A DNA stretch of 64,000 bases, from IMG/VR virus record IMGVR_UViG_3300009181_000033, positions 62,001 to 126,000 of that record; one strand, 5' to 3'. The notes below the pieces were generated by a model. The model saw only the letters and a list, made by a program, of their open reading frames with translations, did not search any database and was not told where the DNA came from. Shown here piece by piece: positions 67 through 22,590 of the stretch. How positions within the stretch are numbered: the stretch's first letter is position 1; each line of letters starts with the position of its first letter. The position numbers and the translations under genes are program-made.

Positions 67-237
67 TCACCCCATAAAACCCTCCACCTGATTATTGGAG
101 TTTTTTCTCACAATGGTTCCGGTGGAACTGGAGTAAAGGAAACGAACCATATCTCCAATTTTCCAATCAACCTCATCGAGTAGTTTTCCATCGAGGGTGA
201 GGAGGGAGGAGATGAATACCGTGTTTATTTCACTCAT
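67..237 (-). CDS. small KOW/SH3-like family protein (WKIGDMVRF)
   Basis: Start reassigned to the ATG at 237, overlapping the upstream stop; carries the family motif internally. Confidence 0.5.
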   Translation of the reverse strand: MSEINTVFISSLLTLDGKLLDEVDWKIGDMVRFLYSSSTGTIVRKNSNNQVEGFMG

Positions 238-419
238 GATTCTTTCTCCAGTTCCCCTGGGGCGATGATTTGTTCCGGACGGAAATAAATCTGTTTCCCA
301 TCGGGTAGCAGGGTGAGGTAGGATTGAATCCCATAGGAATTCCACCTTATATCCAGGATTATCCCGGTTCTTGTTGGCTCACCAAAAAAGTTTGTAAAAC
401 ACAGATCACCAACATCCAT
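234..419 (-). CDS. MKPGD-family small protein (MDVGDL...GII...YLTLLPDG)
   Basis: Family motif; GTGCAA promoter 36 nt upstream. Confidence 0.7.
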   Translation of the reverse strand: MDVGDLCFTNFFGEPTRTGIILDIRWNSYGIQSYLTLLPDGKQIYFRPEQIIAPGELEKES

Positions 420-455
420 AACCCTATCCTATCATGGTTCCTCAGGGTTTTGCAC
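420..455 (-). promoter_or_regulatory. leaderless phage promoter GTGCAA-N18-TAGGAT-N6-ATG
   Basis: One of about 35 copies with fixed spacing to the start codon. Confidence 0.7.
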
Positions 456-701
456 CGTTCCTAGAACAATATAGGTTCCATCGGTTACGTAAGAATAGTT
501 CTCACACCTTCTCATGGGAACTTCGTGTTTAAAAACCGTTCCAGGCCGGGAAGAATGAATCAATAGGATCTTTGAAACACCATCACCAGGAATTCCAGGA
601 AGTTCACCAACGATTGTATAAATTGTGTTTCTGGATTGGGATAGGATAACATCACCAACCTGTAATTCACTCTCCAGGGCAACGGAACCGATCTCCCTCA
701 C
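432..701 (-). CDS. hypothetical protein, KOW-like (LQVGDVI)
   Basis: ORF track; its C-terminus VQNPEEP is encoded by the next promoter. Confidence 0.6.
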   Translation of the reverse strand: MREIGSVALESELQVGDVILSQSRNTIYTIVGELPGIPGDGVSKILLIHSSRPGTVFKHEVPMRRCENYSYVTDGTYIVLGTVQNPEEP

Positions 702-703
702 CG

Positions 704-886
704 TTACCCCACAAGGTGTTTATCGTGGCGGAATTCTGTTAGGATCTCCCACAGGAGGGCCGGAAGTGAATCATGGATGTGAAGGTAACCTGGTATACCA
801 TCATACATGCAACACCAGGCCGGGCCAGGTGAAATAACTCCGGGCTTTTCTCTCCAAATCCTGAATGATTTCATTAGGTTAAACAT
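704..886 (-). CDS. hypothetical protein
   Basis: ORF packs tightly between its neighbours. Confidence 0.55.
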   Translation of the reverse strand: MFNLMKSFRIWREKPGVISPGPAWCCMYDGIPGYLHIHDSLPALLWEILTEFRHDKHLVG

Positions 887-1244: not shown

Positions 1245-1649
1245 TCATATTCTATCATGCTGAGTTTCAATGTATTTTTTCACACTTTCTTCGTTGGTTT
1301 CTCCAACAGATCCGTAGAAGGTTCCTCTACTCCACAAACCTGATCCCCAAAATTTTCTACCTTTTAGTTTTGGAAACTTAGTGAAGATATACACAGCTGA
1401 TATTGATTTCAACGTTTTTGCTATTTCTATCGGAGCTGTTTGATGATCCGCCTGAACAAAAATGTGAACATGATCTGGCATCACTTCAATGGTATGTAAT
1501 AGCCAACCATATTCTCCACAAGTTTCTGCAATGATATGTTTTGTCTCGACAGCAATATCATCTTTTAACACTGCATGTCGATATTTTGGGCACCAAACGA
1601 TGTGATAACCGAGTGAATGAACGCAATTATTTTCTGATATTTTTTGCAT
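1245..1649 (-). CDS. tnpA: IS200-type Y1 (HUH) transposase
   Basis: YHIVWCPKYR, DHVH (HUH), LWSRG, catalytic YIETQ; likely start MQKISENN. Confidence 0.95.
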   Translation of the reverse strand: MQKISENNCVHSLGYHIVWCPKYRHAVLKDDIAVETKHIIAETCGEYGWLLHTIEVMPDHVHIFVQADHQTAPIEIAKTLKSISAVYIFTKFPKLKGRKFWGSGLWSRGTFYGSVGETNEESVKKYIETQHDRI

Positions 1650-1668
1650 ATTGGTTATACTTATAAAC

Positions 1669-3815: not shown

Positions 3816-3851
3816 GTTTCTATTCTACCTCACTCAGGTATGGGTTTGCAC

Positions 3852-4031
3852 TCACCTGATCACCTCGTAACAACTTCGAAACCCATTGAATTCCCAACGA
3901 ACAATCTCTCCGTTTCCCAAAAGAACCTCAACATTTCTCCAGGATACCTTGAGAATCAATCCAATCTCAGGTGTGTAACGGTGAACCACCAATTTTCCAG
4001 GTTGAATATCGTTAACACTTGAAGGAATCAC
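3852..4031 (-). CDS. MKPGD-family small protein (IQPGKLVV), not in the ORF track
   Basis: Manual translation, 59 aa, GTGA overlap with the upstream gene. Confidence 0.6.
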   Translation of the reverse strand: MIPSSVNDIQPGKLVVHRYTPEIGLILKVSWRNVEVLLGNGEIVRWEFNGFRSCYEVIR

Positions 4032-4345
4032 GGATCATCCTTTTCATCCTTACACATGTGATCCAAATAGAATGGAAGGGCACCTGGTGGCATGGGTTGA
4101 ACCTGAAACATTTGTTGGGAAATTTGAGTATAATTCCGTGTGATGGGCCTCACGATATTATCAAAGGGATTCTTAAAATTGCTCCATAACACCTTGGCAT
4201 TGTTTTCATCGATTTTTTCCACCACCGTTCCAAGTGAATGTGGGGCCAAATAAAACCGTACCATATCACCTGGTTTTGGTTCATTACAAAACTTGCCTTC
4301 GATGGTTACCAGGGTTCTAATATCCATGATTCTAATATCACTCAT
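4028..4345 (-). CDS. MKPGD-family protein with C-terminal extension
   Basis: PKPGDMVRF...LGTVV...VLWS. Confidence 0.7.
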   Translation of the reverse strand: MSDIRIMDIRTLVTIEGKFCNEPKPGDMVRFYLAPHSLGTVVEKIDENNAKVLWSNFKNPFDNIVRPITRNYTQISQQMFQVQPMPPGALPFYLDHMCKDEKDDP

Positions 4346-4599
4346 GATTCACCTTCCACCTGTTGAGGAATTGCCCGATTTAACCAACCAATAATACCCC
4401 TTGAGGTGATAACCCGGCAACCATTTCCACCTCGTTCAAAGGAATCCTCCAATACCATTGCGAGTTCTCCTGTTTCAAAGAATCCACTAAAACCATTGGG
4501 ATTTTCTTCGATCTTTCCCCACCTGGCACGGAGAACATTACCGAACATCTTATCAATCTCAGGAATTCCTCCTAAACGAACGAGTTCACCAGGTTTCAC
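4342..4599 (-). CDS. MKPGD-family small protein
   Basis: MKPGELVR...GIIGW. Confidence 0.75.
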   Translation of the reverse strand: MKPGELVRLGGIPEIDKMFGNVLRARWGKIEENPNGFSGFFETGELAMVLEDSFERGGNGCRVITSRGIIGWLNRAIPQQVEGES

Positions 4600-4640
4600 T
4601 TGAGCACCTCTATGCTAGAGTACCACACTGATCGGGTGTT

Positions 4641-4835
4641 TTACACGCACGAGATCATCTCAAGACTGACCGGTTGGAGGCTCAAGGTTCTCCCGTCTTG
4701 AAGCACGATCTTCCAAACATCCAGTGTTCCACGTTTCCCAGGGCTCAACACGATACCCAACATCCCGTTGTACTCTTTGGTCCAGGACTTGTCACCCGCC
4801 CTCACTTTCACTCGAACCAGATCACCAGGTTTCAT
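4641..4835 (-). CDS. MKPGD-family small protein, KOW-like
   Basis: MKPGDLVRV...GMLGIVL...LEMIS. Confidence 0.75.
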   Translation of the reverse strand: MKPGDLVRVKVRAGDKSWTKEYNGMLGIVLSPGKRGTLDVWKIVLQDGRTLSLQPVSLEMISCV

Positions 4836-5047
4836 ACGATCACCTCAGTTTTAAGGTGTGTTACCTGAGATGATTCGGATAAATCCGGCCATAAAATACG
4901 TACCCTATTTTTATCAAATATTTCTAGTACAATTCCAAGCCTCATGTGGCCATTGTAGAAGTTACCTACCATATCACCTGGTTGTGGATTGTGTACCGGG
5001 CCACCGGTGGGGGCAGAAAGTGAAAGTGTGTAGTGATTAGAGATCAC
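4832..5047 (-). CDS. MKPGD-family small protein
   Basis: PQPGDMV...LGIVL...ILWP. Confidence 0.65.
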   Translation of the reverse strand: MISNHYTLSLSAPTGGPVHNPQPGDMVGNFYNGHMRLGIVLEIFDKNRVRILWPDLSESSQVTHLKTEVIV

Positions 5048-5050
5048 AAT

Positions 5051-5269
5051 TCACTTTACCTCATCTGTGTAACCTGAGAAAATATTGATTACTCCACGAT
5101 CGGTAATCACATGGTAAAATACCCGAGGATTATCACCGCTTTCCACAGATTCCTCCAGAAAAATTCCGATGGTATCCGAAGAAAATCGAATCACAGGTTC
5201 CCCTGGTTTATAATCAAGAGGATATCCATGGGAATGTGCATAGATTCGAATCAAATCACCCGGTTTCAT
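5051..5269 (-). CDS. MKPGD-family small protein
   Basis: MKPGDLIR...GIFLE. Confidence 0.75.
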   Translation of the reverse strand: MKPGDLIRIYAHSHGYPLDYKPGEPVIRFSSDTIGIFLEESVESGDNPRVFYHVITDRGVINIFSGYTDEVK

Positions 5270-5433
5270 GTGGGAAACTCCGTTAGGTTGTGTTCCTGAT
5301 ATGCCAACTTCTGACCCGTGGATGGGTCAAGAACAACACAATAATCCTTTCCAAAAGTTTCAATGATAATCAATGGGGTTCGAGAATCAATGAGTCTGGA
5401 TCCCTTAAGAAAAACCATATCACCTGGTTTCAC
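5266..5433 (-). CDS. MKPGD-family small protein, not in the ORF track
   Basis: Manual translation (V/M)KPGDMVFL, 55 aa. Confidence 0.65.
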   Translation of the reverse strand: MKPGDMVFLKGSRLIDSRTPLIIIETFGKDYCVVLDPSTGQKLAYQEHNLTEFPT

Positions 5434-5606
5434 GAGATCACCTGGTAATAGTTAAGGAAGTATGCTTGTGCACCATGATTCACCTTGCCATTTGTGAATA
5501 AAACAACAAACCCGTATTCAGTTTCCTCAAGAATCACACCCATCTCCTCATCATGAAAAACCGAGGCATTTGTATAGATGGTATGAATCATATCACCGGT
5601 TTTCAT
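5430..5606 (-). CDS. MKPGD-family small protein, not in the ORF track
   Basis: MKTGDMI..., 58 aa, with its own GTGCAA promoter. Confidence 0.65.
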   Translation of the reverse strand: MKTGDMIHTIYTNASVFHDEEMGVILEETEYGFVVLFTNGKVNHGAQAYFLNYYQVIS

Positions 5607-5642: not shown

Positions 5643-5837
5643 TCAAAGTGATTCTATTTCATCATAGAAAACTGGGAATATCTTTGCAGTTGCTGGATGA
5701 AGAACCTGAGATGGTTCGGATTGATCCACACCCATATCCTCCAGGAGTATGAAAAAATCATCTCGAATTTCACGAATCACCAAGGAACCATAGATATCGG
5801 AATCCACAGTCAATCGTACGAGATCACCACGAATCAT
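5643..5837 (-). CDS. MKPGD-family small protein
   Basis: MIRGDLVR. Confidence 0.7.
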   Translation of the reverse strand: MIRGDLVRLTVDSDIYGSLVIREIRDDFFILLEDMGVDQSEPSQVLHPATAKIFPVFYDEIESL

Positions 5838-6028
5838 ACAGGTTTAATCCTTTCCAGGCCAATTCTTTTCACACCGGTGCTGGTGATGATTTCACAGGTT
5901 GGAAATGATGGTGAATAATCTGGATGATTCCACAGAATTTGCTGAACATAAATTCCAAGATAAGGAATGGCATAAGTGTAGGAGTTAACCATCATTCCTT
6001 CAACTTTTACGAGATCACCGGGTTTCAT
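5834..6028 (-). CDS. MKPGD-family small protein
   Basis: MKPGDLVK. Confidence 0.75.
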   Translation of the reverse strand: MKPGDLVKVEGMMVNSYTYAIPYLGIYVQQILWNHPDYSPSFPTCEIITSTGVKRIGLERIKPV

Positions 6029-6248
6029 TGAGAATCTCCATATCCATTCTATAAACCCAACGTACTCCTCGAGGAAATAAAACCTTCAAAACATCCTGAC
6101 CCCATTGATTCTGATGTTCTTCAAGAAGGCAAACAATCTCATTTTTTTCCATGTGAATTTCCCAGGAATCACACTGATCATCAGTGTATACACGTACCAC
6201 ACCAACCTGAATTTTATTGCTGACACGAAGAAGATCACCAGGTTTCAT
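6015..6248 (-). CDS. MKPGD-family small protein
   Basis: MKPGDLLR...KVLFPRGVRW. Confidence 0.75.
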   Translation of the reverse strand: MKPGDLLRVSNKIQVGVVRVYTDDQCDSWEIHMEKNEIVCLLEEHQNQWGQDVLKVLFPRGVRWVYRMDMEILNETR

Positions 6249-6508
6249 ACCAATTCCAGATCACATCTTTTTATCCAACCACAACCACCTAATGTAGGTA
6301 AAACCTTTACCCAAAATGTTTGGATGTGTTTTCCATCACCAGGAATTTCCTTTTGTTCCAATACAATTCCAACATCAATGTAACTGAATTTTCCTACGTG
6401 GCACTTCCTATAGATCGATTCAAAACTCGGCGGATCATCCCACAGCACCTTAAATGGTTCCTCACCCTCCAATTCAGGAATGATTCGTACCATATCACCG
6501 GGTTTCAT
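6245..6508 (-). CDS. MKPGD-family small protein
   Basis: MKPGDMVR...GIVLE...WVKV...GW; promoter at 6509-6544. Confidence 0.75.
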   Translation of the reverse strand: MKPGDMVRIIPELEGEEPFKVLWDDPPSFESIYRKCHVGKFSYIDVGIVLEQKEIPGDGKHIQTFWVKVLPTLGGCGWIKRCDLELV

Positions 6509-6517: not shown

Positions 6518-6787
6518 CTACCACATCCATTCCACGGTTTGCACATCTTCTTCTCGAATCCAACCAATTCCGGTGGGACAAGAAATCTTCAACCACCTCT
6601 CGTAGATCTCATCATCTTCATCCACGTAAACATCACATTCCAATACCAATCCAACATCCAAGTAGTGAAAATGGGTTGCAGGTGGAATAAGAATTCCAGC
6701 CTTTGTGTACAACACCAAGGTGGCAACATCAGGAAAGTTTGGATCCAAACTTTCCGCACGAATTCGTACGAGATATCCAGGGATCAC
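6518..6787 (-). CDS. MKPGD-family small protein
   Basis: MIPGYLVR...CPTGIGW; close paralogue of 8294-8563. Confidence 0.75.
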   Translation of the reverse strand: MIPGYLVRIRAESLDPNFPDVATLVLYTKAGILIPPATHFHYLDVGLVLECDVYVDEDDEIYERWLKISCPTGIGWIREEDVQTVEWMW

Positions 6788-6999
6788 GAGATAACCTCGA
6801 GGATGGAATCTGTGAGTTCCGCAATTCTTCCTTTACCCATCCAATTAGGGAGAGTTTCGTTCATGAGAATCGTACACAGGTGAACCTGATCATATCCACC
6901 CGAATCACGGAAACAACCTTCCATCGGGCGAATGTGTAGGATGATTCCAATCATTTCCCTTCCTTGATCATGGGTTCGTACCAGATCACCAGGTTTCAC
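6784..6999 (-). CDS. MKPGD-family small protein
   Basis: MKPGDLVR...LEVIS. Confidence 0.75.
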   Translation of the reverse strand: MKPGDLVRTHDQGREMIGIILHIRPMEGCFRDSGGYDQVHLCTILMNETLPNWMGKGRIAELTDSILEVIS

Positions 7000-7232
7000 G
7001 TGAGAACCTCTATATCATCCTCAATCTCTTCATCCTTCAACCAGGTTCTTCCAACCATTCTAACAGGGGAGGTGAGAAAAACATGGATCTCGTTGTACTT
7101 GGATCCTGGCTTCTTTGGGATGAAATCAATCACCATTCCAAACCAATCACCATAAACGTTATCAAAAACTTGATGACGATGGTAAAAATCAGGCGGAACA
7201 GGTTTGTTTCTAACCATATCACCAGGTTTCAT
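6996..7232 (-). CDS. MKPGD-family small protein
   Basis: MKPGDMVR; promoter upstream. Confidence 0.75.
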   Translation of the reverse strand: MKPGDMVRNKPVPPDFYHRHQVFDNVYGDWFGMVIDFIPKKPGSKYNEIHVFLTSPVRMVGRTWLKDEEIEDDIEVLT

Positions 7233-7250: not shown

Positions 7251-7487
7251 TCACATGTGGGTTTGCATGGTTTGCCGGGTTGATTCCATACGATAAGCGG
7301 TTTGAGGTTCAACCACGATTAGGTCTGATTCCCTACAATGAACGATTCCTTGGGAAGGAAACAACACAGACCACCATGGAAACGGATCATAGGTTTTCGG
7401 TGTGTGACTCTCAAGCAAGAATCCATATTCAATGTCCAGATTCATTTCCCATCGAAACTTCCAACAGACAAGATCACCGGGGCTCAT
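7251..7487 (-). CDS. MKPGD-family small protein
   Basis: MSPGDLV. Confidence 0.7.
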   Translation of the reverse strand: MSPGDLVCWKFRWEMNLDIEYGFLLESHTPKTYDPFPWWSVLFPSQGIVHCRESDLIVVEPQTAYRMESTRQTMQTHM

Positions 7488-7746: not shown

Positions 7747-7994
7747 TTGCTTCCTCCTTTCAAGATTTCTTCTACGAGTAACTCAGGCTCACCCCATCTT
7801 TCGATCGAACGCCAAGGTAAAGAACCGAGCTCATTTCGCCGTAGCTGGCTCAAATCGTTGAGCTCAGTGATTCCGTAGATTTCAGCGTTCTCAATCTCTT
7901 CGTGGGCATATTTGAATCCAATTTTGCCAGCCTCGGACTCATCCTTCGCCTCTACGAGAATTTCTGTTTGAAATGTCACGCGATAAAGTTTCAT
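7743..7994 (-). CDS. hypothetical protein, paralogue of 10223-10489
   Basis: LYRxTFQTEILV...GSLPWR shared. Confidence 0.75.
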   Translation of the reverse strand: MKLYRVTFQTEILVEAKDESEAGKIGFKYAHEEIENAEIYGITELNDLSQLRRNELGSLPWRSIERWGEPELLVEEILKGGSK

Positions 7995-8251
7995 GGTAGC
8001 ACTTTATCATAGTTTGGACTGGGTTTGCACTCAATGGCTACATTTGCGATCCATAATGGTTGTCCATGCACCAGGATTCTCGTGAATTCTTCACGAATCT
8101 CTAGGATGACCCCTACGTCCTCGGAATAAACAATGACAGCCTTGTGATACCCATATTCCCCTGGATAGCTAGCGTATGCTTTTCTTCCAAGATCAAGGCC
8201 ATGCATCACGGCCCACCGTGGGATCGTAGAGACCATATCACCAGGTTTCAT
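7991..8251 (-). CDS. MKPGD-family small protein
   Basis: MKPGDMV; promoter at 8252-8287. Confidence 0.75.
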   Translation of the reverse strand: MKPGDMVSTIPRWAVMHGLDLGRKAYASYPGEYGYHKAVIVYSEDVGVILEIREEFTRILVHGQPLWIANVAIECKPSPNYDKVLP

Positions 8252-8293
8252 GGTTTTATCTTACCACACTCACGTGTGGGTTTGCACCGGGTT

Positions 8294-8563
8294 TCATGAT
8301 AACTTCTTGATATACACGAGTGGCAACCAACCGATTCCGGTGGGACAAACTATCCTTGCCCAAACACCATCGAGTTCTGGTGGGTCATACTTGTTGACAT
8401 TCATAATTTCCACAATGGTTCCAATGTGATCATAGTGGAATCGAGCAGTAGACTCAAGCCGAGTGGACCAGATACCGGGGGAAGAGTAGAACAAAACATC
8501 AGGCTCAGGATGGTTACGATTCTGGATTCGTTTGTTGAGGATGACAAGATCACCGGGTTTCAT
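8294..8563 (-). CDS. MKPGD-family small protein
   Basis: MKPGDLV...CPTGIGW. Confidence 0.75.
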   Translation of the reverse strand: MKPGDLVILNKRIQNRNHPEPDVLFYSSPGIWSTRLESTARFHYDHIGTIVEIMNVNKYDPPELDGVWARIVCPTGIGWLPLVYIKKLS

Positions 8564-10513: not shown

Positions 10514-10798
10514 TCAGATTTGCACATCTACATTCATTACTGTTCCAGGAGAAATCAACTTAATCTCATCCTCTTCCTCCACGAAAATTTCTTTCACAAC
10601 ACCTTCACACAAAAGTTTTAAGGTTGAATATGAAGTTTCCCAACGCCCAAATGGATCTTGATTTTGACCTTCATCGTGATTCAATACCACACCCACAATC
10701 ACACCACATTCCATTCCTTCCCAAATCTTGGTAATCTTAATCAAATTACCCCTCATCAAACCTAAACACTGTGATCTAGACATACTTGAATCCCCCAA
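10514..10798 (-). CDS. MKPGD-like small protein (MRGNLI)
   Basis: Family-like pattern; start uncertain. Confidence 0.55.
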   Translation of the reverse strand: MGDSSMSRSQCLGLMRGNLIKITKIWEGMECGVIVGVVLNHDEGQNQDPFGRWETSYSTLKLLCEGVVKEIFVEEEDEIKLISPGTVMNVDVQI

Positions 10799-12021: not shown

Positions 12022-12234
12022 CTAACTCTTTTCACAAACCACCTCAAACTCCACCACATCAAAGAGATCACAGATATCTTTCATCCGACCTCGGTGGGTT
12101 ATTCCATTACTCAACAGGTACTTGTAGGACAATCCCCAGGTGTCTTCAGTCACCGACAGGATAACTCCGGTCAAGTTTGAATGTCCATTTCTCTGCAGGT
12201 ACTCGTTTGGAAGTAATAGATCACCAGGTTTCAT
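12022..12234 (-). CDS. MKPGD-family small protein
   Basis: MKPGDLL. Confidence 0.75.
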   Translation of the reverse strand: MKPGDLLLPNEYLQRNGHSNLTGVILSVTEDTWGLSYKYLLSNGITHRGRMKDICDLFDVVEFEVVCEKS

Positions 12235-12431
12235 TCCACCAACTCCAGGTAATTTCGATGAAGTCTAACAATCATCTTGCCCGTGTCAGGGTGACCCACC
12301 CTCAACACCTGCAACATCTCCAGCTGGTATTTGGTGTACTTCTTCCCTTTGGTGGGTACGTACTCCGGACCAAGCACCACCCCAAGAATGTCGGGTGAAG
12401 TCTTGAATCGAACCAGGTTACCAGGCTTCAT
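12231..12431 (-). CDS. MKPGD-family small protein
   Basis: MKPGNLVRF; promoter at 12432-12467. Confidence 0.75.
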   Translation of the reverse strand: MKPGNLVRFKTSPDILGVVLGPEYVPTKGKKYTKYQLEMLQVLRVGHPDTGKMIVRLHRNYLELVE

Positions 12432-16343: not shown

Positions 16344-16613
16344 CTAAAACTCACTCCCGGCGTCGTCGACAAGTGTCCCCCCCAACTGACACCTGCTTCC
16401 CATCTCCATTAGCCTAACCCAAGAATGCATCACCCAACCAATTTCGGTACCAAACATAACCTTCAACCAATCTTCACCCCACCAATTTTCGATGTCCAAT
16501 ACGAGTCCGGGAATTCCATAAACATTCATTAACCTCTGTCCACCAAAATTTCCAATTTGGACACAAGGCGAAATGTTCTCTGTAGCCGTACACACCAAAT
16601 CGCCGGGTTTCAT
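16344..16613 (-). CDS. MKPGD-family small protein
   Basis: MKPGDLV...WLKV...IGW. Confidence 0.75.
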   Translation of the reverse strand: MKPGDLVCTATENISPCVQIGNFGGQRLMNVYGIPGLVLDIENWWGEDWLKVMFGTEIGWVMHSWVRLMEMGSRCQLGGTLVDDAGSEF

Positions 16614-16957
16614 GGGCTCACTGGATGTCTTTCATCTACGCAACGAAGTGGATCCTCACAAGAACACACAACAAGGGTGCTTCCATCGTCTTTCTCCTGA
16701 ATTTCAATAAATCCCTTTACACACTCAATCCTTGTATCCATCTTCGCTAAAACAACGAAAGGAGTGCACGTTGTGGGAACTGTGGGAGTTGAAACAGTTG
16801 TTGCCTGAGACAATGAATCATCAATGTTTTTCGAAATAAAAAGTGTAATAACAATTAAAGTTGCAACTGCAAATACACCTACGAAAATTCTTCTCTTACT
16901 CATGTCATTCTTCTCCATAAACATAATTTGCTTCAGTTTCATGTCCATTCGGCCCAA
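16610..16957 (-). CDS. putative membrane-anchored protein
   Basis: Single TM helix, Cys-rich tail; start uncertain. Confidence 0.55.
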   Translation of the reverse strand: MGRMDMKLKQIMFMEKNDMSKRRIFVGVFAVATLIVITLFISKNIDDSLSQATTVSTPTVPTTCTPFVVLAKMDTRIECVKGFIEIQEKDDGSTLVVCSCEDPLRCVDERHPVSP

Positions 16958-17154
16958 TTGTAATCAATCAAATAGATGGCTTGTCCATGTAACACCTCTA
17001 GTCCATGTTTCGTAAGGGTACGTGTGTTTGCCGTGATTGCAATACCTTTTCCCGCGTGTTCACTAACATCATCCAGCAACATTCCAAAGCATACTCGCCA
17101 TCGGGATTTTTCACTCTCCCACTTTCTCCACTTCACCATATCACCTGGCTTCAC
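16939..17154 (-). CDS. MKPGD-family small protein
   Basis: GTG start (V)KPGDMVKW. Confidence 0.65.
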   Translation of the reverse strand: MKPGDMVKWRKWESEKSRWRVCFGMLLDDVSEHAGKGIAITANTRTLTKHGLEVLHGQAIYLIDYNWAEWT

Positions 17155-17371
17155 TGACAACCTCAAATTCCAGCTCATCATTTGGCATCTGAAAGAAATC
17201 CCAAACATCAACCACACCATCGTTCTTTAGAACACGAAACACGTGGGTAGGATAGACACCAAGTCCTCGTGACCAATAATCGAGCGGATTAAGAACCTCT
17301 AGGATCAATCCAGATTCACCATCCTCAAAGAACGTGGTCTTGATGTAGTCACCCGACTTTGGAGAAATCAC
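17141..17371 (-). CDS. MKPGD-family small protein
   Basis: KSGDYI...GLILE...RVL. Confidence 0.7.
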   Translation of the reverse strand: MISPKSGDYIKTTFFEDGESGLILEVLNPLDYWSRGLGVYPTHVFRVLKNDGVVDVWDFFQMPNDELEFEVVSEAR

Positions 17372-17598
17372 TTTACCTCCGTAAAATAACTAGAGTTACT
17401 CCAACCAACGTATCCATTCGCCAACCACCGAACCCACAATTCACGATTCTTGGCAGTCTCAAGAATGATTCCGGTTGTATTGCGGGGTGCATCTGGAATG
17501 AGAGGATTTACCCAATCGTTCTTGAAATTTTCAGCCCCAGGAATCGACGTAAACATCGGGAGATTACAGAGACACTTGACGAGGCTTCCTGACTGCAT
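17368..17598 (-). CDS. MKPGD-family small protein
   Basis: MQSGSLVK...GIILE...VGW. Confidence 0.7.
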   Translation of the reverse strand: MQSGSLVKCLCNLPMFTSIPGAENFKNDWVNPLIPDAPRNTTGIILETAKNRELWVRWLANGYVGWSNSSYFTEVK

Positions 17599-18341: not shown

Positions 18342-18611
18342 TTATTCAAGATTGTCGACGTTGTCTACGAGAGTCTTGAGAATCCAGCCCATTTTTCCTC
18401 GAGAAGTCAATGCCCACACATAATTTTCACATTCTGACGTCCTAATAACTACTCCTATTTCTTCGTACTTAAAGGTGCCGATTGTGTCGATTATCTCTTC
18501 ATTCCATATGCGTGCAGAAATGGAAGGAGTGATGAGATCGCCAGGAAATATTTTTTTTGATTTTTCTCCGCCGATCTTCTTGGGAGCGTTGCCCACATAT
18601 CGATGTTTCAT
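18342..18611 (-). CDS. MKPGD-family small protein
   Basis: FPGDLI...GVVI...TSRGKMGW. Confidence 0.7.
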   Translation of the reverse strand: MKHRYVGNAPKKIGGEKSKKIFPGDLITPSISARIWNEEIIDTIGTFKYEEIGVVIRTSECENYVWALTSRGKMGWILKTLVDNVDNLE

Positions 18612-18612: not shown

Positions 18613-18843
18613 TTATGATATTTTTTCTATTGAAAATATAAGATTTGAATTTAAAGAAGAATAGTCATCACCTATCAAAAAGCGAAGCCACGTAAATTCG
18701 CCCCATTTCCCAGAGCCTGATCTTGAATTTTGTTGTGTTTCAATAAAAATGCCGACGTACACGGAACCCATGATGCTCCGAATTTTAACCAGATCACCCG
18801 GGTCCAATTCAATTTCTTTGGAGCTATTATATTTCACCAACAT
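18613..18843 (-). CDS. MKPGD-family small protein
   Basis: DPGDLVKI...GIFIE. Confidence 0.7.
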   Translation of the reverse strand: MLVKYNSSKEIELDPGDLVKIRSIMGSVYVGIFIETQQNSRSGSGKWGEFTWLRFLIGDDYSSLNSNLIFSIEKIS

Positions 18844-19084
18844 GGCTCAAAACTCTCACCAAAAAATTATTTTCCAATTCCTTGCTGGTTATCCAAACAC
18901 TCTTAACACAACCATCCACCAATAGCTTCATTGCAAAAACCCCGACCATCTCCAAATCACAAATCTTATTATCAAATCCCAAAAAAATTGCCAAAAAATG
19001 ATTGTTCTCTATCGAGTGACTATACACCCCTCTGATCTCGAGAAGATCACCGATAGTGATTTTTTCATTTTTATTTTTCGACAT
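18827..19084 (-). CDS. MKPGD-family small protein
   Basis: TIGDLL...LLVDG. Confidence 0.65.
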   Translation of the reverse strand: MSKNKNEKITIGDLLEIRGVYSHSIENNHFLAIFLGFDNKICDLEMVGVFAMKLLVDGCVKSVWITSKELENNFLVRVLSHVGEI

Positions 19085-19176: not shown

Positions 19177-19226
19177 AAATCGGTCGGACTCCCACAAAGA
19201 GAATCCGACCGAAGTTGTTTTTTGTG
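19177..19226 (-). terminator. conserved hairpin, near-identical to 54743-54794
   Basis: CACAAAAAACAACTTCGGTCGGATTCTCTT.GTGGGAGTCCGACCGATTTT. Confidence 0.8.
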
Positions 19227-19238: not shown

Positions 19239-22200
19239 TCAACCAATTAGGGTGAATGGTGCAGTGGGTGGCGTGAAGTCTCCACTGTACAACGCAGTTC
19301 CCTTGGTGAATCGCACTTCGTCAATGTAGCCATTGAACTCAATTCCCAAAACAGTGGAATAGTCAAACACGTTGCCCAAAATCAAACCATTTTGAGCCAA
19401 GTTAAACGAAAATGTTGTTGAGCCATCGCACACACCGTTCAAGTAAACGTATACTGTGTTTCCTTTTCTAGAAACTGCAACGTGATACCAGGTGTTTAAT
19501 TGGATCGCAGTATTGCAAGTCAGATAGGTACCACCTGCTGTATAGAGCTTCAACTTATTCGCAGAGTTCGTACAGATGAGGAGACCATCCTGTGAACTAA
19601 CTCTGGTGTCAACCATACTATTGTAGTAGTCTCCAGGGAAACCCGTGCTCATGGCACTCATATTGAACCAATACTCTATTGTAAAGTCACCTGTTCCAAG
19701 CGCAAAGTCAGAAGAAGTCGCCGCAACCCTTGCGCCCGACCCTCTACCTCCTGGTAGATAGAGCGAAGAACTTCCAAATTTCGACTTGGTCGTTGAGATA
19801 GCAGTCCCGGTCCCATACGCTGTAAATGTCTTTGGTGAAGTTGAACTGTCCGTGAACGTTGTGCTTCCATTTGATCCCTCAAAGTGAAGCAAACAATTAT
19901 TCCCATCGGTAAATGGTGCAGTGGGTGGCGTGAAGCTGTTGTTGTAGGCACACTTTCCAACCAATATGCGGAATTCATCAAAGTAACCATTGGTTGTTCT
20001 GGCACCGCCGGCGGCTGTCGGACAATTTCCGATATAAATTGTATCAGTGTATAAGGTTCCTGTAGCCCCTGACGTTCCAACAAGATTTCCATCGTAATAG
20101 ATCTTTATTGGACCCGAGCTGGTTTCTCTTGTTACTGCGAAATGGTGCCAAGCATTTGCAGTGACTGTACCAGTCGCCGCCAATGAACCACCCCAGCTAG
20201 TACCGTTATATGACCAATACGAATACAATTGATTTGCACCAGTCACCATCAAAAGCAATCCTTTAAATTCATCACCTGTTATTATAAATTGCTCACCTGC
20301 GCTTAAAGCATTCAGGTAGAACCAACCCTCAATGGTGAAGGGACGGTCGAGGAGAGCAATGGGTCTAGCTTCGGTGCGATCCATTTTGACATAATTTGCA
20401 ACATTTCCATTTAGTTTTAGAGAAGAACCTCCAAATTTTGACTGCAATGTTGAAATTTGAGCGGCACCGATAAATGAAACTCTACAAGGCGCAATATTCG
20501 TTGTTTCGTCTATCGTTGAAGTTTGACCATTGATGCCATCAAAATTTAACAAAACTGCAGTCTTTGAATTGCCGGTAACTGGTGTGGTTGGAGCAGTGAA
20601 ATTTCCAGTATAAACTGCCTCACCTAATTGAACCCTTATGTTGTCCATGTAACCATCAAAAGGTGATATTGACTGGGCATGCGCAGCCAAACCTACGTAG
20701 AAATAACGGTAGGAACCAAATGTTGTATTGCAAGCTTGTGACAACACAGATGTACCATTAACATAAATGTTAAATGTGGATCCATTACGAACTGCTGCTA
20801 TGTGGTACCACTGATTAATCTGTGGAACAAACGAAGTGACCCCCGCATAACCGGTCGCATCATCAACAAATCTCAGTACATTTGTTGAACTTTGAATAAA
20901 CAATTGAGGACCAGCAACACCCGCAGAACCATTCCAGAACTCTATGAGATTTTGGAAACCAATGTTGTTGGAATTAAAGTAGAACCAACCTTCCATCGTG
21001 AAGTCTTGTGTTCCAAAGGAATAAGTGTTTGCACTTGGGTTTGCGAACTGGAGCTTGTTGGTGTTGGTGCCATTGAGGTAAAGGGATTTGCCACCGAACT
21101 TTGATTGGGCGGTGGAGGTGGCAACGGTGCCGATGCGATGCTGGGTTAGGGGAGATTGGGCAGAGTCTAAAAGGGGAGAAACGTCTTTTACGGTAACAGT
21201 ACTGTTGCCATTATTTGAAACAAATAATTTTGAATTTGCAGCAACAACACCATAAGGATTAGTAAATCCTGCAAAAGTTGTCGTAACTGAATTTGTTGAA
21301 ATGTCTATAACAGAAACTGTGTTTCCACTATAATTAGCAACATATAGTTTTTTGCCATCTGGACTCACAGATGATCCATATGGTGCTGCACCGACAGTGA
21401 TATCGGTTCCTTTTGTTGAGCTTGAAAAATAAACTGGTGACACGGTCCCGCTAGCATTAGTGTAATTTGAATAGTAAGCAGCGTTAGTTGCTTTTGTTGC
21501 AACATAAGCTCCGGAAAAACCGGTTAAAGTTGACAACAGAGATATAGCACCAGTATCTTGGTTTAAAGAATAAACCTTTACGCTAGATCCTAAGCTTACA
21601 TATAATTTAGTGCCATCAGACGATACTACTGGGGCATATACACCCCATGTCGTGTCTCCCAATAGTGTAGCCGAAGGTGTTGCGGCAGTTAAATCAATCC
21701 TATATAAACCTGCGTTTTGACATGCGACGAATAAAAATTTATCATTTGTAGTTATTGCCGACGAATGAACGCCAGTTCCTGTTGTCACAGAGCTAAAAGA
21801 GCCATTTGTTGTGTCTACAATATAAACTTTATTTTGACTGTAGTTAGTTCCATAAATTTTCGTACCCGTTGAATTTATTGTCAACTGGTGAATTTTATTA
21901 CCCTCTGTTTCGAGAGTTTGTGTTTTCGTTCCTGAGGCAACGTCAATTACATGAATTCCACTTCCCGAAGCGAGAGACCATGAACCAATATAAGCTTTTG
22001 CACCATCAGGCGAAAGAATACCTTGCATTGGTGTTGTGGCGCTTATTGTTGAGTCTGCCACCGAAGCAGCGTCATCGAAGTGCAGCAACATCTTCGTATA
22101 AGGATCAGTAGTGATCGTGGCGGTTCCATTGATAATCTGCTGGATGATAGAAGATGTCCTCTTACGAAGAGCGGTCTTCGACATGTCACCCTTGTTCTTG

Positions 22201-22241
22201 GCGACGACCTTGGTCATGTCGCCCTTAAATTTTATAGGCAT
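19239..22241 (-). CDS. large virion adhesin-like protein: YVTN beta-propeller + three LamG/concanavalin-like domains
   Basis: LYVANYSGNTVSVID; repeated SKFGGSS / FTIEGWFY / WYHIA / GYxDE units; true start MPIKFKG at 22241. Confidence 0.85.
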   Translation of the reverse strand: MPIKFKGDMTKVVAKNKGDMSKTALRKRTSSIIQQIINGTATITTDPYTKMLLHFDDAASVADSTISATTPMQGILSPDGAKAYIGSWSLASGSGIHVIDVASGTKTQTLETEGNKIHQLTINSTGTKIYGTNYSQNKVYIVDTTNGSFSSVTTGTGVHSSAITTNDKFLFVACQNAGLYRIDLTAATPSATLLGDTTWGVYAPVVSSDGTKLYVSLGSSVKVYSLNQDTGAISLLSTLTGFSGAYVATKATNAAYYSNYTNASGTVSPVYFSSSTKGTDITVGAAPYGSSVSPDGKKLYVANYSGNTVSVIDISTNSVTTTFAGFTNPYGVVAANSKLFVSNNGNSTVTVKDVSPLLDSAQSPLTQHRIGTVATSTAQSKFGGKSLYLNGTNTNKLQFANPSANTYSFGTQDFTMEGWFYFNSNNIGFQNLIEFWNGSAGVAGPQLFIQSSTNVLRFVDDATGYAGVTSFVPQINQWYHIAAVRNGSTFNIYVNGTSVLSQACNTTFGSYRYFYVGLAAHAQSISPFDGYMDNIRVQLGEAVYTGNFTAPTTPVTGNSKTAVLLNFDGINGQTSTIDETTNIAPCRVSFIGAAQISTLQSKFGGSSLKLNGNVANYVKMDRTEARPIALLDRPFTIEGWFYLNALSAGEQFIITGDEFKGLLLMVTGANQLYSYWSYNGTSWGGSLAATGTVTANAWHHFAVTRETSSGPIKIYYDGNLVGTSGATGTLYTDTIYIGNCPTAAGGARTTNGYFDEFRILVGKCAYNNSFTPPTAPFTDGNNCLLHFEGSNGSTTFTDSSTSPKTFTAYGTGTAISTTKSKFGSSSLYLPGGRGSGARVAATSSDFALGTGDFTIEYWFNMSAMSTGFPGDYYNSMVDTRVSSQDGLLICTNSANKLKLYTAGGTYLTCNTAIQLNTWYHVAVSRKGNTVYVYLNGVCDGSTTFSFNLAQNGLILGNVFDYSTVLGIEFNGYIDEVRFTKGTALYSGDFTPPTAPFTLIG

Positions 22242-22307
22242 AATAGTACTAATTTCCTTTCCGGAACTCCGCGAAAGTTCCGTCGACGTATAAATATAAT
22301 TCAATGT
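22201..22307 (-). repeat. 107-bp perfect inverted repeat, copy A (partner 51499-51605)
   Basis: Direct comparison; covers ATATTTA, a 5' UTR hairpin, the RBS and the first ~13 codons. Confidence 0.92.
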
Positions 22308-22314
22308 CGAATAT

Positions 22315-22590
22315 TTAAAATTTAAAAGCGCTGTCCTTCGGCGCGTCCAGGACCAGGTGCATGTCTCCTTCCCACACATCGAAAGACTTGATGAATCCAT
22401 CGATTAAAATGGTGGCTGTGACCATCGGTGGGAAAACCAATTGTCCTTCTTCTGGCAGCTCGAGCGCCAACAACAGGCCCGTATAGCGCCGGCCGCCGGA
22501 ATATACGTCGACAAAATCGCCGGGCTTGAAATCTTTCCAATTCGAATTTTTCACGGCCATCTCACTTGACATTGAACAGGAAAAATCCAA
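22315..22590 (-). CDS. MKPGD-family small protein (FKPGDFV)
   Basis: Family motif; start probably MAVKNS. Confidence 0.65.
   Translation of the reverse strand: MDFSCSMSSEMAVKNSNWKDFKPGDFVDVYSGGRRYTGLLLALELPEEGQLVFPPMVTATILIDGFIKSFDVWEGDMHLVLDAPKDSAFKF

What the first reader, a model, noticed from the sequence alone, without database searches (positions are those of the whole stretch)
67..22590. Array of ~30 hyper-divergent 'MKPGDLV' KOW/SH3-like mini-proteins
Seen: about 30 minus-strand ORFs of 55-110 aa share only a skeleton: (K/x)PGD(L/M)V, a variable loop, G(I/L)(V/I)LE, (W/Y)xV(L), G(x)GW, and LE(V/L)I/V. Many are chained by ATGA/GTGA overlaps, so the DNA motif (A/G)TGAAACC(T/C)GGTGAT recurs at the junctions. 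Established: this pattern resembles KOW/SH3/Tudor beta-barrels (NusG, L24, CarD). Inference: the array is a diversified library of small binding modules with a conserved scaffold and variable loop. It could act as an anti-defence or host-range repertoire, reshuffled by recombination at the conserved starts.
Basis: partly seen in the sequence, partly recalled or inferred. Interest (0 to 1): 0.78.

Follow-up and report, generated by a model that had tools for sequence, protein, structure and literature searches.

The report
Shuffled SH3-like mini-gene array, huge phage
A 298-kb freshwater phage carries about 30 tiny genes for one unnamed family of SH3-like barrel proteins. A short shared start/stop junction couples their translation and is also where related phages gain, lose and reshuffle these genes.

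Summary
Thirty-two minus-strand ORFs (55-105 aa) between 67 and 22590 share the (K)PGD(L/M)V ... G(I/V)(V/I)LE ... VL ... GW ... LEV(I) skeleton. Leave-one-out profiles recover 24 firmly, 5 at the borderline and 3 not at all. The start motif occurs 15 times against 0.02 expected.

Two AlphaFold models show the same five-strand SH3-like barrel. Profile comparisons place the family nearest bacterial SH3, and no Pfam, PHROG or NCBIfam model captures it. It forms arrays of up to about 24 copies in many large uncultured phages.

New here: the junction is a composite translational signal. The C-terminal Leu-Glu-Val is coded as GAG-GT (87% GAG against 46% background), a Shine-Dalgarno-like core 5-6 nt before the next start. 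ATGAAACCnGGTGA holds TGA stops in both other frames, and 72% of motif-first genes overlap an upstream ORF by 4 or 14 nt.

Near-identical relatives and four lake metagenomes differ by whole-gene indels whose breakpoints fall on this motif. Paralogues are old, orthologues are under purifying selection, and gene order is shuffled between phages.

The binding, anti-defence or host-range role remains untested.

The parts
67..237 (-). Truncated family member with an N-terminal extension. It has KIGDMV and GTIV but no C-terminal half.
   Evidence: Gene call of 56 aa. Leave-one-out E=0.015 for the longer ORF 67-345. 89% identical to part of L086:1990-2313.
234..419 (-). Family member (MDVGDL...).
   Evidence: Leave-one-out E=1.3e-3. 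Orthologue at 60% in L086.
432..701 (-). Doubtful member (LQVGDVI...).
   Evidence: Leave-one-out E=40. Included only on the motif and its position.
3852..4031 (-). Family member with a short N-terminal extension (IQPGKLV).
   Evidence: Leave-one-out E=0.31. Orthologues at 62-67% in L086 and L070, and at about 93% in L046-L049, which the family HMM recognises.
4028..4345 (-). Family member with an N-terminal extension (PKPGDMV). Absent from L046-L049.
   Evidence: Leave-one-out E=2.4e-6..
4342..4599 (-). Family member (MKPGELV).
   Evidence: Leave-one-out E=8.8e-7. Orthologues at 94-98% in L046-L049.
4641..4835 (-). Minimal family member of 64 aa, used for the first structure model. Present or absent in lake populations.
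   Evidence: AlphaFold pLDDT 93.7, five strands. Leave-one-out E=1.2e-6. Deleted from start motif to start motif in L046-L049 and in runs X3 and X5.
4832..5047 (-). Family member with an N-terminal extension (PQPGDMV).
   Evidence: Leave-one-out E=4e-5.
5051..5269 (-). Family member (MKPGDLI).
   Evidence: Leave-one-out E=1.9e-9. Orthologue P0004 at 79% with dN/dS 0.22.
5266..5433 (-). Family member (GTG start, MKPGDMV).
   Evidence: Leave-one-out E=4.3e-3. Relatives carry an extra cassette on each side of it.
5430..5606 (-). Family member (MKTGDMI).
   Evidence: Leave-one-out E=3.5e-7. A 78-nt in-frame deletion variant occurs in run X2.
5643..5837 (-). Weak family member (MIRGDLV). Tandemly duplicated in L004 and in run X2.
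   Evidence: Leave-one-out E=0.08. Duplication shown.
5834..6028 (-). Family member. Its start motif holds the stop codon of the upstream gene (14-nt overlap).
   Evidence: Leave-one-out E=9.3e-5.. Orthologue at 64% in L096.
6015..6248 (-). Family member ending ..ILNETR. This tail is the next gene's start motif read in another frame.
   Evidence: Leave-one-out E=3.4e-6.. Orthologue at 70% in L070.
6245..6508 (-). Family member of 87 aa with a long loop. L004 has an extra cassette just before it.
   Evidence: Leave-one-out E=9.5e-9.. Orthologues at 60-62% in L128, L086 and L070.
6518..6787 (-). Family member (MIPGYLV).
   Evidence: Leave-one-out E=4.5e-5.
6784..6999 (-). Family member. Deleted from start motif to start motif in run X3.
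   Evidence: Leave-one-out E=1.1e-6. Joint 6774->6986.
6996..7232 (-). Family member.
   Evidence: Leave-one-out E=4e-4. Orthologues at 60% in L070 and L058.
7251..7487 (-). Family member (MSPGDLV). In L004 its start is a chimera with the start of 8294-8563.
   Evidence: Leave-one-out E=8.5e-7. Crossover lies inside CCGGTGATCTTGTC.
7991..8251 (-). Family member.
   Evidence: Leave-one-out E=2.5e-7.
8252..8296 (-). Solo junction. A start motif is fused to the 3' tail of a member, forming a 13-codon mini-ORF. It looks like the scar of a cassette deletion.
   Evidence: Read from the sequence. The repeat also occurs at 7213-7273 and 12408-12467.
8294..8563 (-). Family member of 89 aa with a 38-residue loop insertion, used for the second structure model.
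   Evidence: AlphaFold pLDDT 82.8 with the same five strands. Leave-one-out E=6.8e-9.
10514..10798 (-). Borderline member (MRGNLI).
   Evidence: Leave-one-out E=0.018.
12022..12234 (-). Family member.
   Evidence: Leave-one-out E=1.1e-5.
12231..12431 (-). Family member (MKPGNLV).
   Evidence: Leave-one-out E=5e-5.
16344..16613 (-). Family member.
   Evidence: Leave-one-out E=7.4e-8.
16939..17154 (-). Family member starting at a GTG (VKPGDMV). It has a 14-nt overlap with the upstream gene.
   Evidence: Leave-one-out E=1.9e-3 for the longer ORF 16939-17220. P0020 begins at this GTG..
17141..17371 (-). Borderline member ending ..VVSEAR, which is the next start motif read in another frame.
   Evidence: Leave-one-out E=0.019..
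17368..17598 (-). Borderline member (MQSGSLV).
   Evidence: Leave-one-out E=0.032.
18342..18611 (-). Family member with an N-terminal extension (IFPGDLI).
   Evidence: Leave-one-out E=5.4e-4.
18613..18843 (-). Family member with an N-terminal extension (LDPGDLV).
   Evidence: Leave-one-out E=2.6e-6.
18827..19084 (-). Doubtful member (ITIGDLL).
   Evidence: Leave-one-out E=8.1.
22315..22590 (-). Borderline member with an N-terminal extension (FKPGDFV).
   Evidence: Leave-one-out E=0.049.

Best explanation
The region is a cassette array of one undescribed family of single-domain, cytoplasmic SH3-superfamily mini-proteins, carried by a 298-kb uncultured freshwater phage.

Shown:
- Each cassette is a complete small gene.
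- Neighbouring cassettes are joined by a conserved composite junction of about 30 nt that lies inside the coding sequence. The last strand of the upstream protein (Leu-Glu-Val-Ile) is coded as nTn-GAG-GTn-ATn, which gives a GAGGT Shine-Dalgarno-like core 5-6 nt before the next start codon.
- The start motif ATG-AAA-CCn-GGT-GA carries a TGA in each of the other two reading frames. An upstream gene in either frame therefore ends inside it, with a 4-nt or a 14-nt overlap.
- These starts are the only sizeable identity between otherwise unalignable cassettes. Whole cassettes are deleted, duplicated, inserted and replaced there. Because stop, ribosome site and start all lie within the repeat, each such event leaves intact genes on both sides.

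Inferred:
- The junction couples translation along the chain.
- Its conservation comes from this translational role, and recombination exploits it.
- The result is a pool of old, individually conserved subfamilies that related phages carry in different numbers, combinations and orders.
- The proteins are small binding modules. Their subfamily-specific loops sit where SH3 domains bind ligands, so each probably docks onto a different host or competitor protein. The array would then be an accessory, strain-variable host-interaction repertoire.
For: Family and fold:
- Alignment A1 and leave-one-out HMMs support the family.
- Two models, 64 aa at pLDDT 93.7 and 89 aa at pLDDT 82.8, share the same five strands. 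The extra residues of the longer one sit in the beta1-beta2 loop.
- Structure searches return only SH3-like barrels: PetP, PsaE, NdhS, YorP, KOW domains of Spt5 and NusG, eL21 and Mind bomb repeats, at TM 0.65-0.8 and Z up to 8.8.
- The family profile's best matches among PDB sequences are SH3 domains, E=6.5e-4.
- hhalign gives 94.9% probability against bacterial SH3 repeats and 88.9% against Mind-bomb SH3 repeats.
- The ESM Atlas gives viral 'hypothetical' clusters as neighbours by features and SH3b proteins as neighbours by structure.

Junction:
- The motif is enriched 15 against 0.02 expected.
- Of 194 motif-first genes in non-redundant loci, 73 have a 14-nt overlap and 67 a 4-nt overlap.
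- The Gly codon is GGT in 81% of 27 window members and in 72% of 122 diverse members found without the exact seed motif, against 34% background. It is only 40% when the motif is not at the gene start. The Pro third position varies freely.
- The Glu codon in the C-terminal xE[VIL]x is GAG in 86 of 99 cases against 46% background, p=2e-17. Glu lies at two preferred distances from the stop codon, which match the two overlap classes.

Turnover:
- L004 (98-99.6% identical) differs from the window by three events. A four-gene deletion has its crossover inside two start motifs. An extra gene is flanked by a 20-21-nt direct repeat of the start. There is also a tandem duplication.
- L046-L050 have two extra and two missing cassettes across eight slots. 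Their homology blocks overlap by 17-36 nt at the junctions.
- In contigs from four lake metagenomes, 17 of 26 joint endpoints lie at start motifs, which cover 8.7% of the stretch (p about 1e-12). For well-anchored joints the count is 9 of 16 (p about 2e-6). Both alleles of one deletion coexist in run X5.
- Starts share in-register exact runs of up to 24 nt, and 21 pairs share 14 nt or more. Gene interiors share at most 6 nt.

Age and selection:
- 27 of 32 members have their best match in another phage.
- Gene order is shuffled in L070, L086 and L096.
- Pooled dN/dS is 0.34, and per-gene dS ranges from 0.03 to 0.54, a mosaic pattern.
- Within orthologue pairs, loops are 54% and cores 61% identical.

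Spread:
- 261 members in 51 of 89 phage loci, with up to 19 per locus in that scan. A re-scan of single loci gave 21-24 in L096, L086 and L070.
- Chains of 14-nt overlaps occur in a different 266-kb phage.
- All named hits are 'hypothetical protein'.
Against: - No experiment or expression data bears on function, and no RNA run was listed. The host is unknown.
- No member is fused to an informative domain. The array's neighbours (AAA ATPase, metallophosphoesterase, LamG proteins) do not point to a pathway.
- The Shine-Dalgarno reading assumes that the unknown host uses SD-led initiation. Only about half of the larger genes in the window show an SD-like sequence upstream.
- GGT is still preferred (76%) in genes where no upstream ORF uses the ggTGA stop. 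The hidden-stop explanation is therefore incomplete.
- Structural matches form a plateau across KOW, Tudor, PsaE and SH3 domains, so the fold gives no specific function.
- Metagenome contigs can be chimeric. Against this, the same variants recur across assemblers and samples, and the shared motif is shorter than Logan's 31-mers.
Confidence: 0.6

Rival explanations
1. The proteins are KOW/Sm-like factors that bind nucleic acid or the ribosome or RNA polymerase. They would tune host or phage transcription and translation, rather than being a repertoire of protein binders.
For: Top VIA-align matches include Spt5 and NusG KOW domains and the ribosomal proteins eL21 and eS4, at Z 7.6-8.8. The N-terminal PGDxVrV...G..G.V pattern resembles a KOW motif.
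Against: Only 1 of 70 members touches Pfam KOW, at E=0.1. Window members are mostly acidic, with median pI 5.4; 20 of 30 lie below pI 6 and 2 above pI 8. Thirty different paralogues are hard to reconcile with a single conserved machine as target. Profile matches favour SH3 over KOW.
Confidence: 0.12
2. The shared N-terminus MKPGDLV is a targeting or processing signal, like the capsid-targeting leader of T-even internal proteins. The array would then encode proteins packed into the virion and injected with the DNA.
For: A conserved N-terminal heptapeptide on otherwise divergent small proteins in a locus that is polymorphic between strains. The comparison with the T-even internal-protein locus rests on my own knowledge.
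Against: In both models residues 6-9 form strand 1 of the barrel, not a detachable leader. Homology runs the whole length of the proteins. The synonymous GGT constraint points to a nucleic-acid-level reason. Seven members carry the motif internally, after N-terminal extensions.
Confidence: 0.07
3. The ORFs are decaying or neutral ORFan filler produced by tandem duplication, with no maintained function.
For: The region is plastic. It holds IS200/IS605 elements, a truncated member at 67-237, a deletion scar at 8252-8296, and variable copy number between strains.
Against: dN/dS is 0.2-0.55 for the orthologue pairs with appreciable divergence, and two low-divergence pairs (dS about 0.03) give about 1.5. 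Orthologues are kept at 44-89% identity in other phages, with conserved loops. The models are confident. No recent duplicates exist within the window: the best paralogue scores are 40 bits or less.
Confidence: 0.05
4. The chain is translated as multi-domain products by programmed frameshifting or read-through at the junctions, giving a tandem-SH3 polyprotein rather than separate mini-proteins.
For: Natural fusions exist: two-domain proteins P0006, P0026 and L133:748-1161, and the repeat protein P0007. Neighbouring genes overlap in shifted frames.
Against: Every cassette has its own start codon, placed at a fixed distance after a GAGGT. Stops are present in both alternative frames of the motif. 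Frame offsets between neighbours are irregular (+1, +2 or gaps). No slippery heptamer is conserved in the motif.
Confidence: 0.03

Closest known systems
Bacterial SH3 domains (SH3b, Pfam SH3_3 PF08239) and Mind-bomb SH3 repeats (SH3_15 PF18346)
   Same: The five-strand barrel is shared, as is the sequence logic G.(I/V)(V/I)L ... W.kV ... G..GW(I/V) ... L. hhalign gives 94.9% and 88.9% probability over 57-60 columns. The structural neighbours in the ESM Atlas are SH3b proteins.
   Different: Members do not reach Pfam thresholds; 6 of 70 give weak SH3_3 hits. They are stand-alone proteins of 55-105 aa without signal peptides, not domains of cell-wall hydrolases or E3 ligases. They have their own conserved N-terminal MKPGD strand.
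PeSL-mediated modular shuffling in the hyperplastic regions of T4-type phages (Arbiol et al. 2010, PMC2839356; Comeau et al. 2014, PMC4122927)
   Same: Short conserved sequences flank small accessory ORFs. They are the endpoints of the insertions, deletions and replacements that distinguish closely related phages (abstract; here).
   Different: PeSLs are intergenic cassettes made of a promoter and a terminator. Here the repeat lies inside the coding sequence (stop of one gene, ribosome site, start of the next) and all cassettes belong to one protein family. The sigma-70 and terminator scans show no enrichment.
Lineage-specific expansions of small domains in jumbo phages, for example about 35 zinc-ribbon copies in Bacillus phage G (Iyer et al. 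2021, PMC7824862)
   Same: Tens of copies of one small domain in a very large phage genome, with unknown function.
   Different: The fold differs. Here the copies are old subfamilies shared and reshuffled among related phages, not a private expansion, and they are joined by a conserved coupling junction.
Small stand-alone SH3-like proteins: YorP of the Bacillus SPbeta prophage (2HEQ), PetP, NdhS and PsaE of cyanobacteria
   Same: Single-domain SH3-like barrels of 55-85 aa. They are the best structural matches, at TM 0.7-0.8 and Z 8.2-8.8. That PetP, NdhS and PsaE act by docking onto large complexes is my own knowledge.
   Different: No sequence relationship was detected (10-22% identity in the structural alignments). 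None of them is known as a multi-copy array.
Translational coupling through overlapping stop and start codons (ATGA), common in phage operons
   Same: Twelve of the 22 motif-first genes in the window and 67 of 194 across loci use aTGA overlaps.
   Different: A second, 14-nt overlap class uses a TGA within codons 4-5 of the downstream gene; it accounts for 73 of 194 cases. Both classes keep the same GAGGT-to-start spacing. The arrangement is conserved across a whole gene family, so that C-terminal tails (..NETR..NESR) predict the next gene's N-terminus.

Membership tests
SH3-like small beta-barrel fold (SH3/KOW/Tudor/PsaE class) | Five antiparallel strands forming a small barrel of about 60 residues | tested here: met
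   Two AlphaFold models (pLDDT 93.7 and 82.8) have strands at 6-9/26-35/38-45/50-53/58-62 and at 6-9/48-56/66-73/76-81/85-87. All top structural matches are SH3-like barrels.
Pfam SH3_3 (bacterial SH3, PF08239) | Score at or above the Pfam gathering threshold (27 bits) | tested here: not met
   Six of 70 members give sub-threshold hits, best E=1.4e-4. The two-domain relative P0026 scores 22.5 bits against the 27-bit cut-off.
Pfam SH3_3 (bacterial SH3, PF08239) | Remote homology over the whole domain | tested here: met
   hhalign of A2 against SH3b repeats cut from P0010 and P0024 gives 94.9% probability, E=4.4e-8, over 57 columns.
Pfam SH3_15 (Mind bomb SH3 repeat, PF18346) | Profile match to the repeat | tested here: inconclusive
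   None of the 70 members is listed for SH3_15 at E<=1. hhalign against repeats of P0012 (itself SH3_15 at E=4e-22) gives 88.9% probability.
KOW motif (PF00467) | Match to the 27-residue KOW motif; occurrence within NusG/Spt5 or ribosomal proteins | tested here: not met
   One of 70 members matches, at E=0.1. The proteins are stand-alone. KOW domains appear only as fold-level neighbours.
Tudor/chromo-type readers | Aromatic cage for methylated ligands | not tested
   Tudor domains appear at Z 7.1-7.5. No cage analysis was made.
PeSL-type modular shuffling (T4-type hyperplastic regions) | Indels between close relatives end in short conserved repeats that flank accessory ORFs | tested here: met
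   17 of 26 joint endpoints lie at motifs that cover 8.7% of the stretch.
PeSL-type modular shuffling (T4-type hyperplastic regions) | The repeat is an early sigma-70-like promoter plus a stem-loop terminator | tested here: not met
   The repeat lies in the coding start. 34 promoter-like sites were found against 39.4 expected, and 17 terminator-like sites against 17.0 expected.
PeSL-type modular shuffling (T4-type hyperplastic regions) | Excised mini-circles | not testable with these tools
   Needs PCR or long reads on phage DNA.
T-even internal-protein locus with a capsid-targeting sequence | A cleavable N-terminal leader shared by otherwise unrelated proteins | tested here: not met
   The shared N-terminus is strand 1 of the fold, and the proteins are homologous throughout. 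Cleavage itself cannot be tested here.

The most novel reading that the evidence does not exclude
The junction is more than a by-product of translational coupling. It may be a selected, frame-independent 'cassette boundary' that lets huge phages swap ready-made SH3-like binder genes within and between genomes without ever breaking a gene. This would be a recombinase-free counterpart of integron cassettes. It would give lake phage populations a combinatorial repertoire that varies between strains and is aimed at host defence or takeover targets. The GGT bias in genes that do not currently need the hidden stop would be the trace of that selection.
Probability: 0.22. Interest if true: 0.85.

Novelty: new variant of a known kind. 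Interest (0 to 1): 0.62.

Why it matters
Huge phages are full of small unnamed genes, and how these regions are organised and renewed is poorly understood. This case gives three things.

First, it defines a widespread and so far unannotated protein family with a confident fold. It has hundreds of members in many large uncultured phages and is absent from Pfam, PHROGs and NCBIfam.

Second, it is a clear example of overlapping codes. Two pieces of the protein 'signature' are also a ribosome-binding site and a pair of out-of-frame stop codons, and this is visible as strong synonymous-codon bias.

Third, it gives direct population evidence that this junction is where cassettes are gained, lost and exchanged in nature.

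If the proteins prove to be specific binders of host factors, the arrays would be a natural library of compact binding scaffolds and a marker locus for phage-host arms races in lakes. Annotators would also benefit, because the ..NETR-type tails and the 14-nt overlaps can mislead gene callers.

Tried and rejected
- DNA search of the array and of 30-54 kb against GenBank phages found no match. tblastn of two family members against the same collection also found nothing. No cultured relative was found this way.
- Pfam, PHROGs and NCBIfam scans of members gave only sporadic sub-threshold hits.
I used the AAA ATPase and a DNA pattern instead.
- Loci centred on AAA-ATPase relatives (37-66% identity; L043 is a partial match) hold almost no family members within 10 kb. 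The array is therefore not tied to that gene.
Most fall in unrelated proteins such as NlpC/P60 and EVE-like proteins, and none forms an array.
- The profile hit to P0005 (NlpC/P60 repeats) rests on the PGDVVFF string and was set aside as spurious.
- Consensus promoter and terminator scans showed no enrichment.
- An RNA run search listed none, so expression could not be checked.
- Recent tandem duplication as the origin of the array is rejected. The best within-window paralogue scores are 40 bits or less.
- Ongoing hypervariation of the loops is rejected. Orthologue loops are 54% identical.

Full report
**Where the window comes from**

The window is part of a 297,894-bp contig from a freshwater metagenome (JGI 3300009181, also IMG/VR UViG_3300009181_000033). 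The contig looks like a huge phage. It carries a cluster of 11 tRNA genes. It also has phage-type ATPases, an endonuclease and structural-protein matches, and two LamG/beta-propeller proteins of about 1050 aa. It matches no GenBank phage at the DNA level.

**Checking the observation**

The ORF list and alignment A1 show 32 minus-strand ORFs with the described skeleton. The DNA motif RTGAAACCNGGTGAT, allowing one mismatch, occurs 15 times. All copies are on the minus strand between 4585 and 17154, against 0.02 expected.

HMM hits on the training members are circular, so I ran leave-one-out profiles against all 513 window ORFs of 40 aa or more.
- 24 members are recovered at E<=0.005.
- 5 members fall at E 0.015-0.05.
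- 5643-5837 (0.08), 432-701 (40) and 18827-19084 (8.1) are not recovered on their own.
- 3852-4031 also fails alone (0.31), but the family HMM recognises its orthologues in other contigs.

No further member lies in 22.6-64 kb or on the plus strand. Two untrained members lie beyond the left edge of the window, in L001.

**Fold and family**

- A 64-aa member (4641-4835), modelled with A1, gives pLDDT 93.7 and five strands.
- An 89-aa member (8294-8563), modelled with the 70-sequence alignment A2, gives pLDDT 82.8 and the same five strands. Its 38 extra residues sit in a lower-confidence beta1-beta2 connection.
- Foldseek and VIA-align return only SH3-like small barrels: PetP, PsaE, NdhS, YorP, KOW domains of Spt5 and NusG, eL21, eS4, Mind bomb repeats and Tudor domains. 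TM-scores are 0.65-0.8 and Z reaches 8.8, but no single family stands out.
- BFVD returns many unnamed small phage proteins.
- At the sequence level, the A2 profile's best PDB matches are canonical SH3 domains (Pex13 SH3, E=6.5e-4).
- Six of 70 members touch Pfam SH3_3 below threshold, and only one touches KOW.
- Profile-profile comparison gives 94.9% probability against bacterial SH3 repeats and 88.9% against Mind-bomb SH3 repeats.
- ESM Atlas neighbours by features are viral 'hypothetical protein' clusters. Neighbours by structure are SH3b proteins.
- No Pfam, PHROG or NCBIfam model captures the family, and every named database hit is 'hypothetical protein'.

The family is therefore a new, unannotated branch of the SH3 superfamily.

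Column statistics over 255 members show low entropy in the strands. The two connections that correspond to the RT and n-Src loops of SH3 domains have about 4 bits of entropy and insertions of up to 29 and 21 residues.

**Spread**

- An exhaustive profile search of 1.84 billion representatives found 45 hits at E<=1e-3. Most are proteins of 56-99 aa that start with the motif at residue 1.
- Scanning IMG/VR for the start motif gave 86 loci. The family HMM finds 261 members in 51 of the 89 loci scanned, with up to 19 per locus in that scan. A re-scan of single loci gave 21-24 members in L096, L086 and L070. Most of these loci come from contigs of 50-600 kb.
- A different 266-kb phage (L140) shows a chain of genes with 14-nt overlaps next to an AAA ATPase, a metallophosphoesterase and a LamG protein, as in the window.
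- The same pattern in bacterial and archaeal genomes gives only single matches, mostly in unrelated proteins.

**The junction is a composite translational signal**

The motif ATG-AAA-CCn-GGT-GA contains TGA in both other frames (aTGA and ggTGA).
- Among 194 family genes in non-redundant loci whose start codon lies three codons before the invariant Gly, 73 overlap an upstream ORF of 40 or more codons by 14 nt. In these the stop lies in ggTGA.
- Another 67 overlap by 4 nt (aTGA), and 54 do neither.
- In the window the counts are 3, 12 and 7.

The 14-nt class explains the recurring C-terminal tails ..NETR..NESR..NEDR and ..SEAR seen across phages. They are the next gene's MKPGD, MKVGD or MKIGD start read in another frame.

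Synonymous sites confirm a constraint at the DNA level.
- The motif Gly is GGT in 22 of 27 window members and in 88 of 122 diverse members found without the exact seed, against 34% background (p=7e-7 and 1e-17). The Pro third position is unconstrained.
- GGT is at 76% even in the classes that do not use the ggTGA stop. It falls to 40% in the 40 members whose motif is not at the gene start.
- At the other end of the gene, the Glu of the C-terminal xE[VIL]x is GAG in 86 of 99 cases against 46% background (p=2e-17). Glu lies at two preferred distances from the stop, which match the two overlap classes.

GAG-GTn gives a GAGGT core 5-6 nt before the next start in both classes. Some other genes in the window have AGGAG or GGAGG upstream, so SD-led initiation is plausible here, though it is not universal.

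Reading this junction as a translational coupling device is an inference from established knowledge of overlapping stop-start coupling.

**Turnover at the junction**

*L004*, an ENA contig 98-99.6% identical to the window, differs by three events.
- It lacks window 7488-8543 (four genes). The crossover lies inside CCGGTGATCTTGTC, which is shared by the starts of 8294-8563 and 7251-7487. This yields a chimeric start, MKPGD in place of MSPGD.
- It has an extra 74-aa member flanked by a 20-21-nt direct repeat of the start.
- It has a tandem duplication of 5609-5890, with its junction at about 9 nt of microhomology next to a start codon.

*L046-L050* come from another lake series. Compared with the window they have two extra and two missing cassettes across eight slots. 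Their homology blocks overlap by 17-36 nt at the junctions.

*Contigs from four lake metagenomes*, laid on 3800-8600, show 13 joints.
- 17 of 26 endpoints lie within a few nt of a start motif, although motifs cover only 8.7% of the stretch (p about 1e-12).
- For joints anchored by 30 nt or more on each side, 9 of 16 endpoints do so (p about 2e-6).
- The same deletion of 4641-4835 appears in L046-L049, X3 and X5. The same duplication appears in L004 and X2.
- Run X5 holds both alleles of the deletion.

Starts share in-register exact runs of up to 24 nt, and 21 pairs share 14 nt or more. Codons 31-43 share at most 6 nt.

**Age and selection**

- 27 of 32 window members have their best match in another phage's array. 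About 14 have clear orthologues at 44-89% identity. The best within-window paralogue scores never exceed 40 bits.
- In L070, L086 and L096 only 20-45% of members have a window counterpart, and their order is scrambled.
- Pooled dN/dS between the window and L046 is 0.34. Per-gene dS ranges from 0.03 to 0.54, which indicates a mosaic history.
- Within orthologue pairs the loops are 54% identical and the core 61%.

The loops are therefore specific to each subfamily and conserved, not continuously hypervariable. The repertoire varies through which cassettes are present and in what order.

**Function**

This part is inference.
- The proteins have no signal peptides.
- Window members are mostly acidic, with median pI 5.4. 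This argues against general nucleic-acid binding.
- They vary exactly where SH3 domains bind ligands.
- The locus is plastic: it holds IS200/IS605 elements and is polymorphic within single lake samples. That fits accessory host-interaction genes.

I therefore favour small binding modules with subfamily-specific targets. I put this at about one in three. The architecture and the turnover mechanism I hold at about 0.9.

**Comparison with known systems**

The closest known mechanism is PeSL-mediated modular shuffling in T4-type phages (PMC2839356, PMC4122927). The difference is that PeSLs are intergenic promoter-terminator cassettes. Here the repeat is the coding junction itself, and all cassettes belong to one family.

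Large expansions of a small domain in a jumbo phage have a precedent in the roughly 35 zinc ribbons of Bacillus phage G (PMC7824862).

**Verdict**

The finding is real and well structured. It is an undescribed SH3-superfamily mini-protein family arranged as a translationally coupled cassette array that is reshuffled by recombination. I rate it a new variant of known kinds, with function still open.

Noticed in passing
window 1245-2832 and 12597-13688: An IS200/IS605-type element sits inside the array region: Y1 transposase 1245-1685 (-) and TnpB 1651-2832 (+). A second, solo TnpB lies at 12597-13688 (-).
   Followed up: partly
window 7474-7994 and about 9936-10489: A two-gene module that does not belong to the family (7474-7746 and 7743-7994) is duplicated, with 84% nucleotide identity over 240 nt. 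In the second copy the 7474-like gene is split into ORFs of 35 and 43 aa, so it is probably decaying.
   Followed up: partly
window 19239-22400 (-) and 51424-54633 (+): Two proteins of about 1050 aa share the same architecture, a beta-propeller followed by LamG (Laminin_G_3) domains: three LamG stretches in 19239-22400 and two in 51424-54633. They may be receptor-binding or fibre proteins.
   Followed up: no
window 26512-35628: Eleven tRNA genes, all on the minus strand (Gly, Lys x2, Glu, Ser, Met x2, Arg, Tyr, Leu, Thr). Rfam also reports a partial tRNA-like match at 29048-29105 that ARAGORN does not call.
   Followed up: no
window 1-22000 against 30000-50000: G+C is 0.40-0.43 across the array region (0.47 in the 8-10 kb bin that holds the AAA ATPase gene) and 0.49-0.56 further on. 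The array region is thus compositionally distinct from the rest of the genome segment.
   Followed up: no
window 8232-8296, 7213-7273, 12408-12467: A junction repeat of about 60 nt (GTGCAAACCC...GTGTGGTAAG, a spacer, then the next start) is present at 82-92% identity. The copy at 8252-8296 begins with a truncated start motif and reads as a 13-codon mini-ORF, which looks like the scar of a cassette deletion. It contains a small hairpin, CCACAC-GTGA-GTGTGG. Whether it acts as a promoter or terminator is unknown.
   Followed up: partly
window 19180-19212 (-): A strong terminator-like hairpin (14 pairs followed by a T-rich tail, TTTTCTT) lies just after the large LamG gene and before the sub-array that starts at 19084.
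   Followed up: no
P0007, P0006, P0026, L133:748-1161: Natural fusions of the family occur elsewhere. There are two-domain proteins, and an 803-aa protein with several repeats, a PDZ domain and a C-terminal hydrophobic segment.
   Followed up: partly
window 58597-61269 (+): An 890-aa protein has a weak match to phage structural protein family phrog_697. It also has a short sub-threshold match to the rifampin ADP-ribosyltransferase family Arr-ms, at residues 253-277.
   Followed up: no
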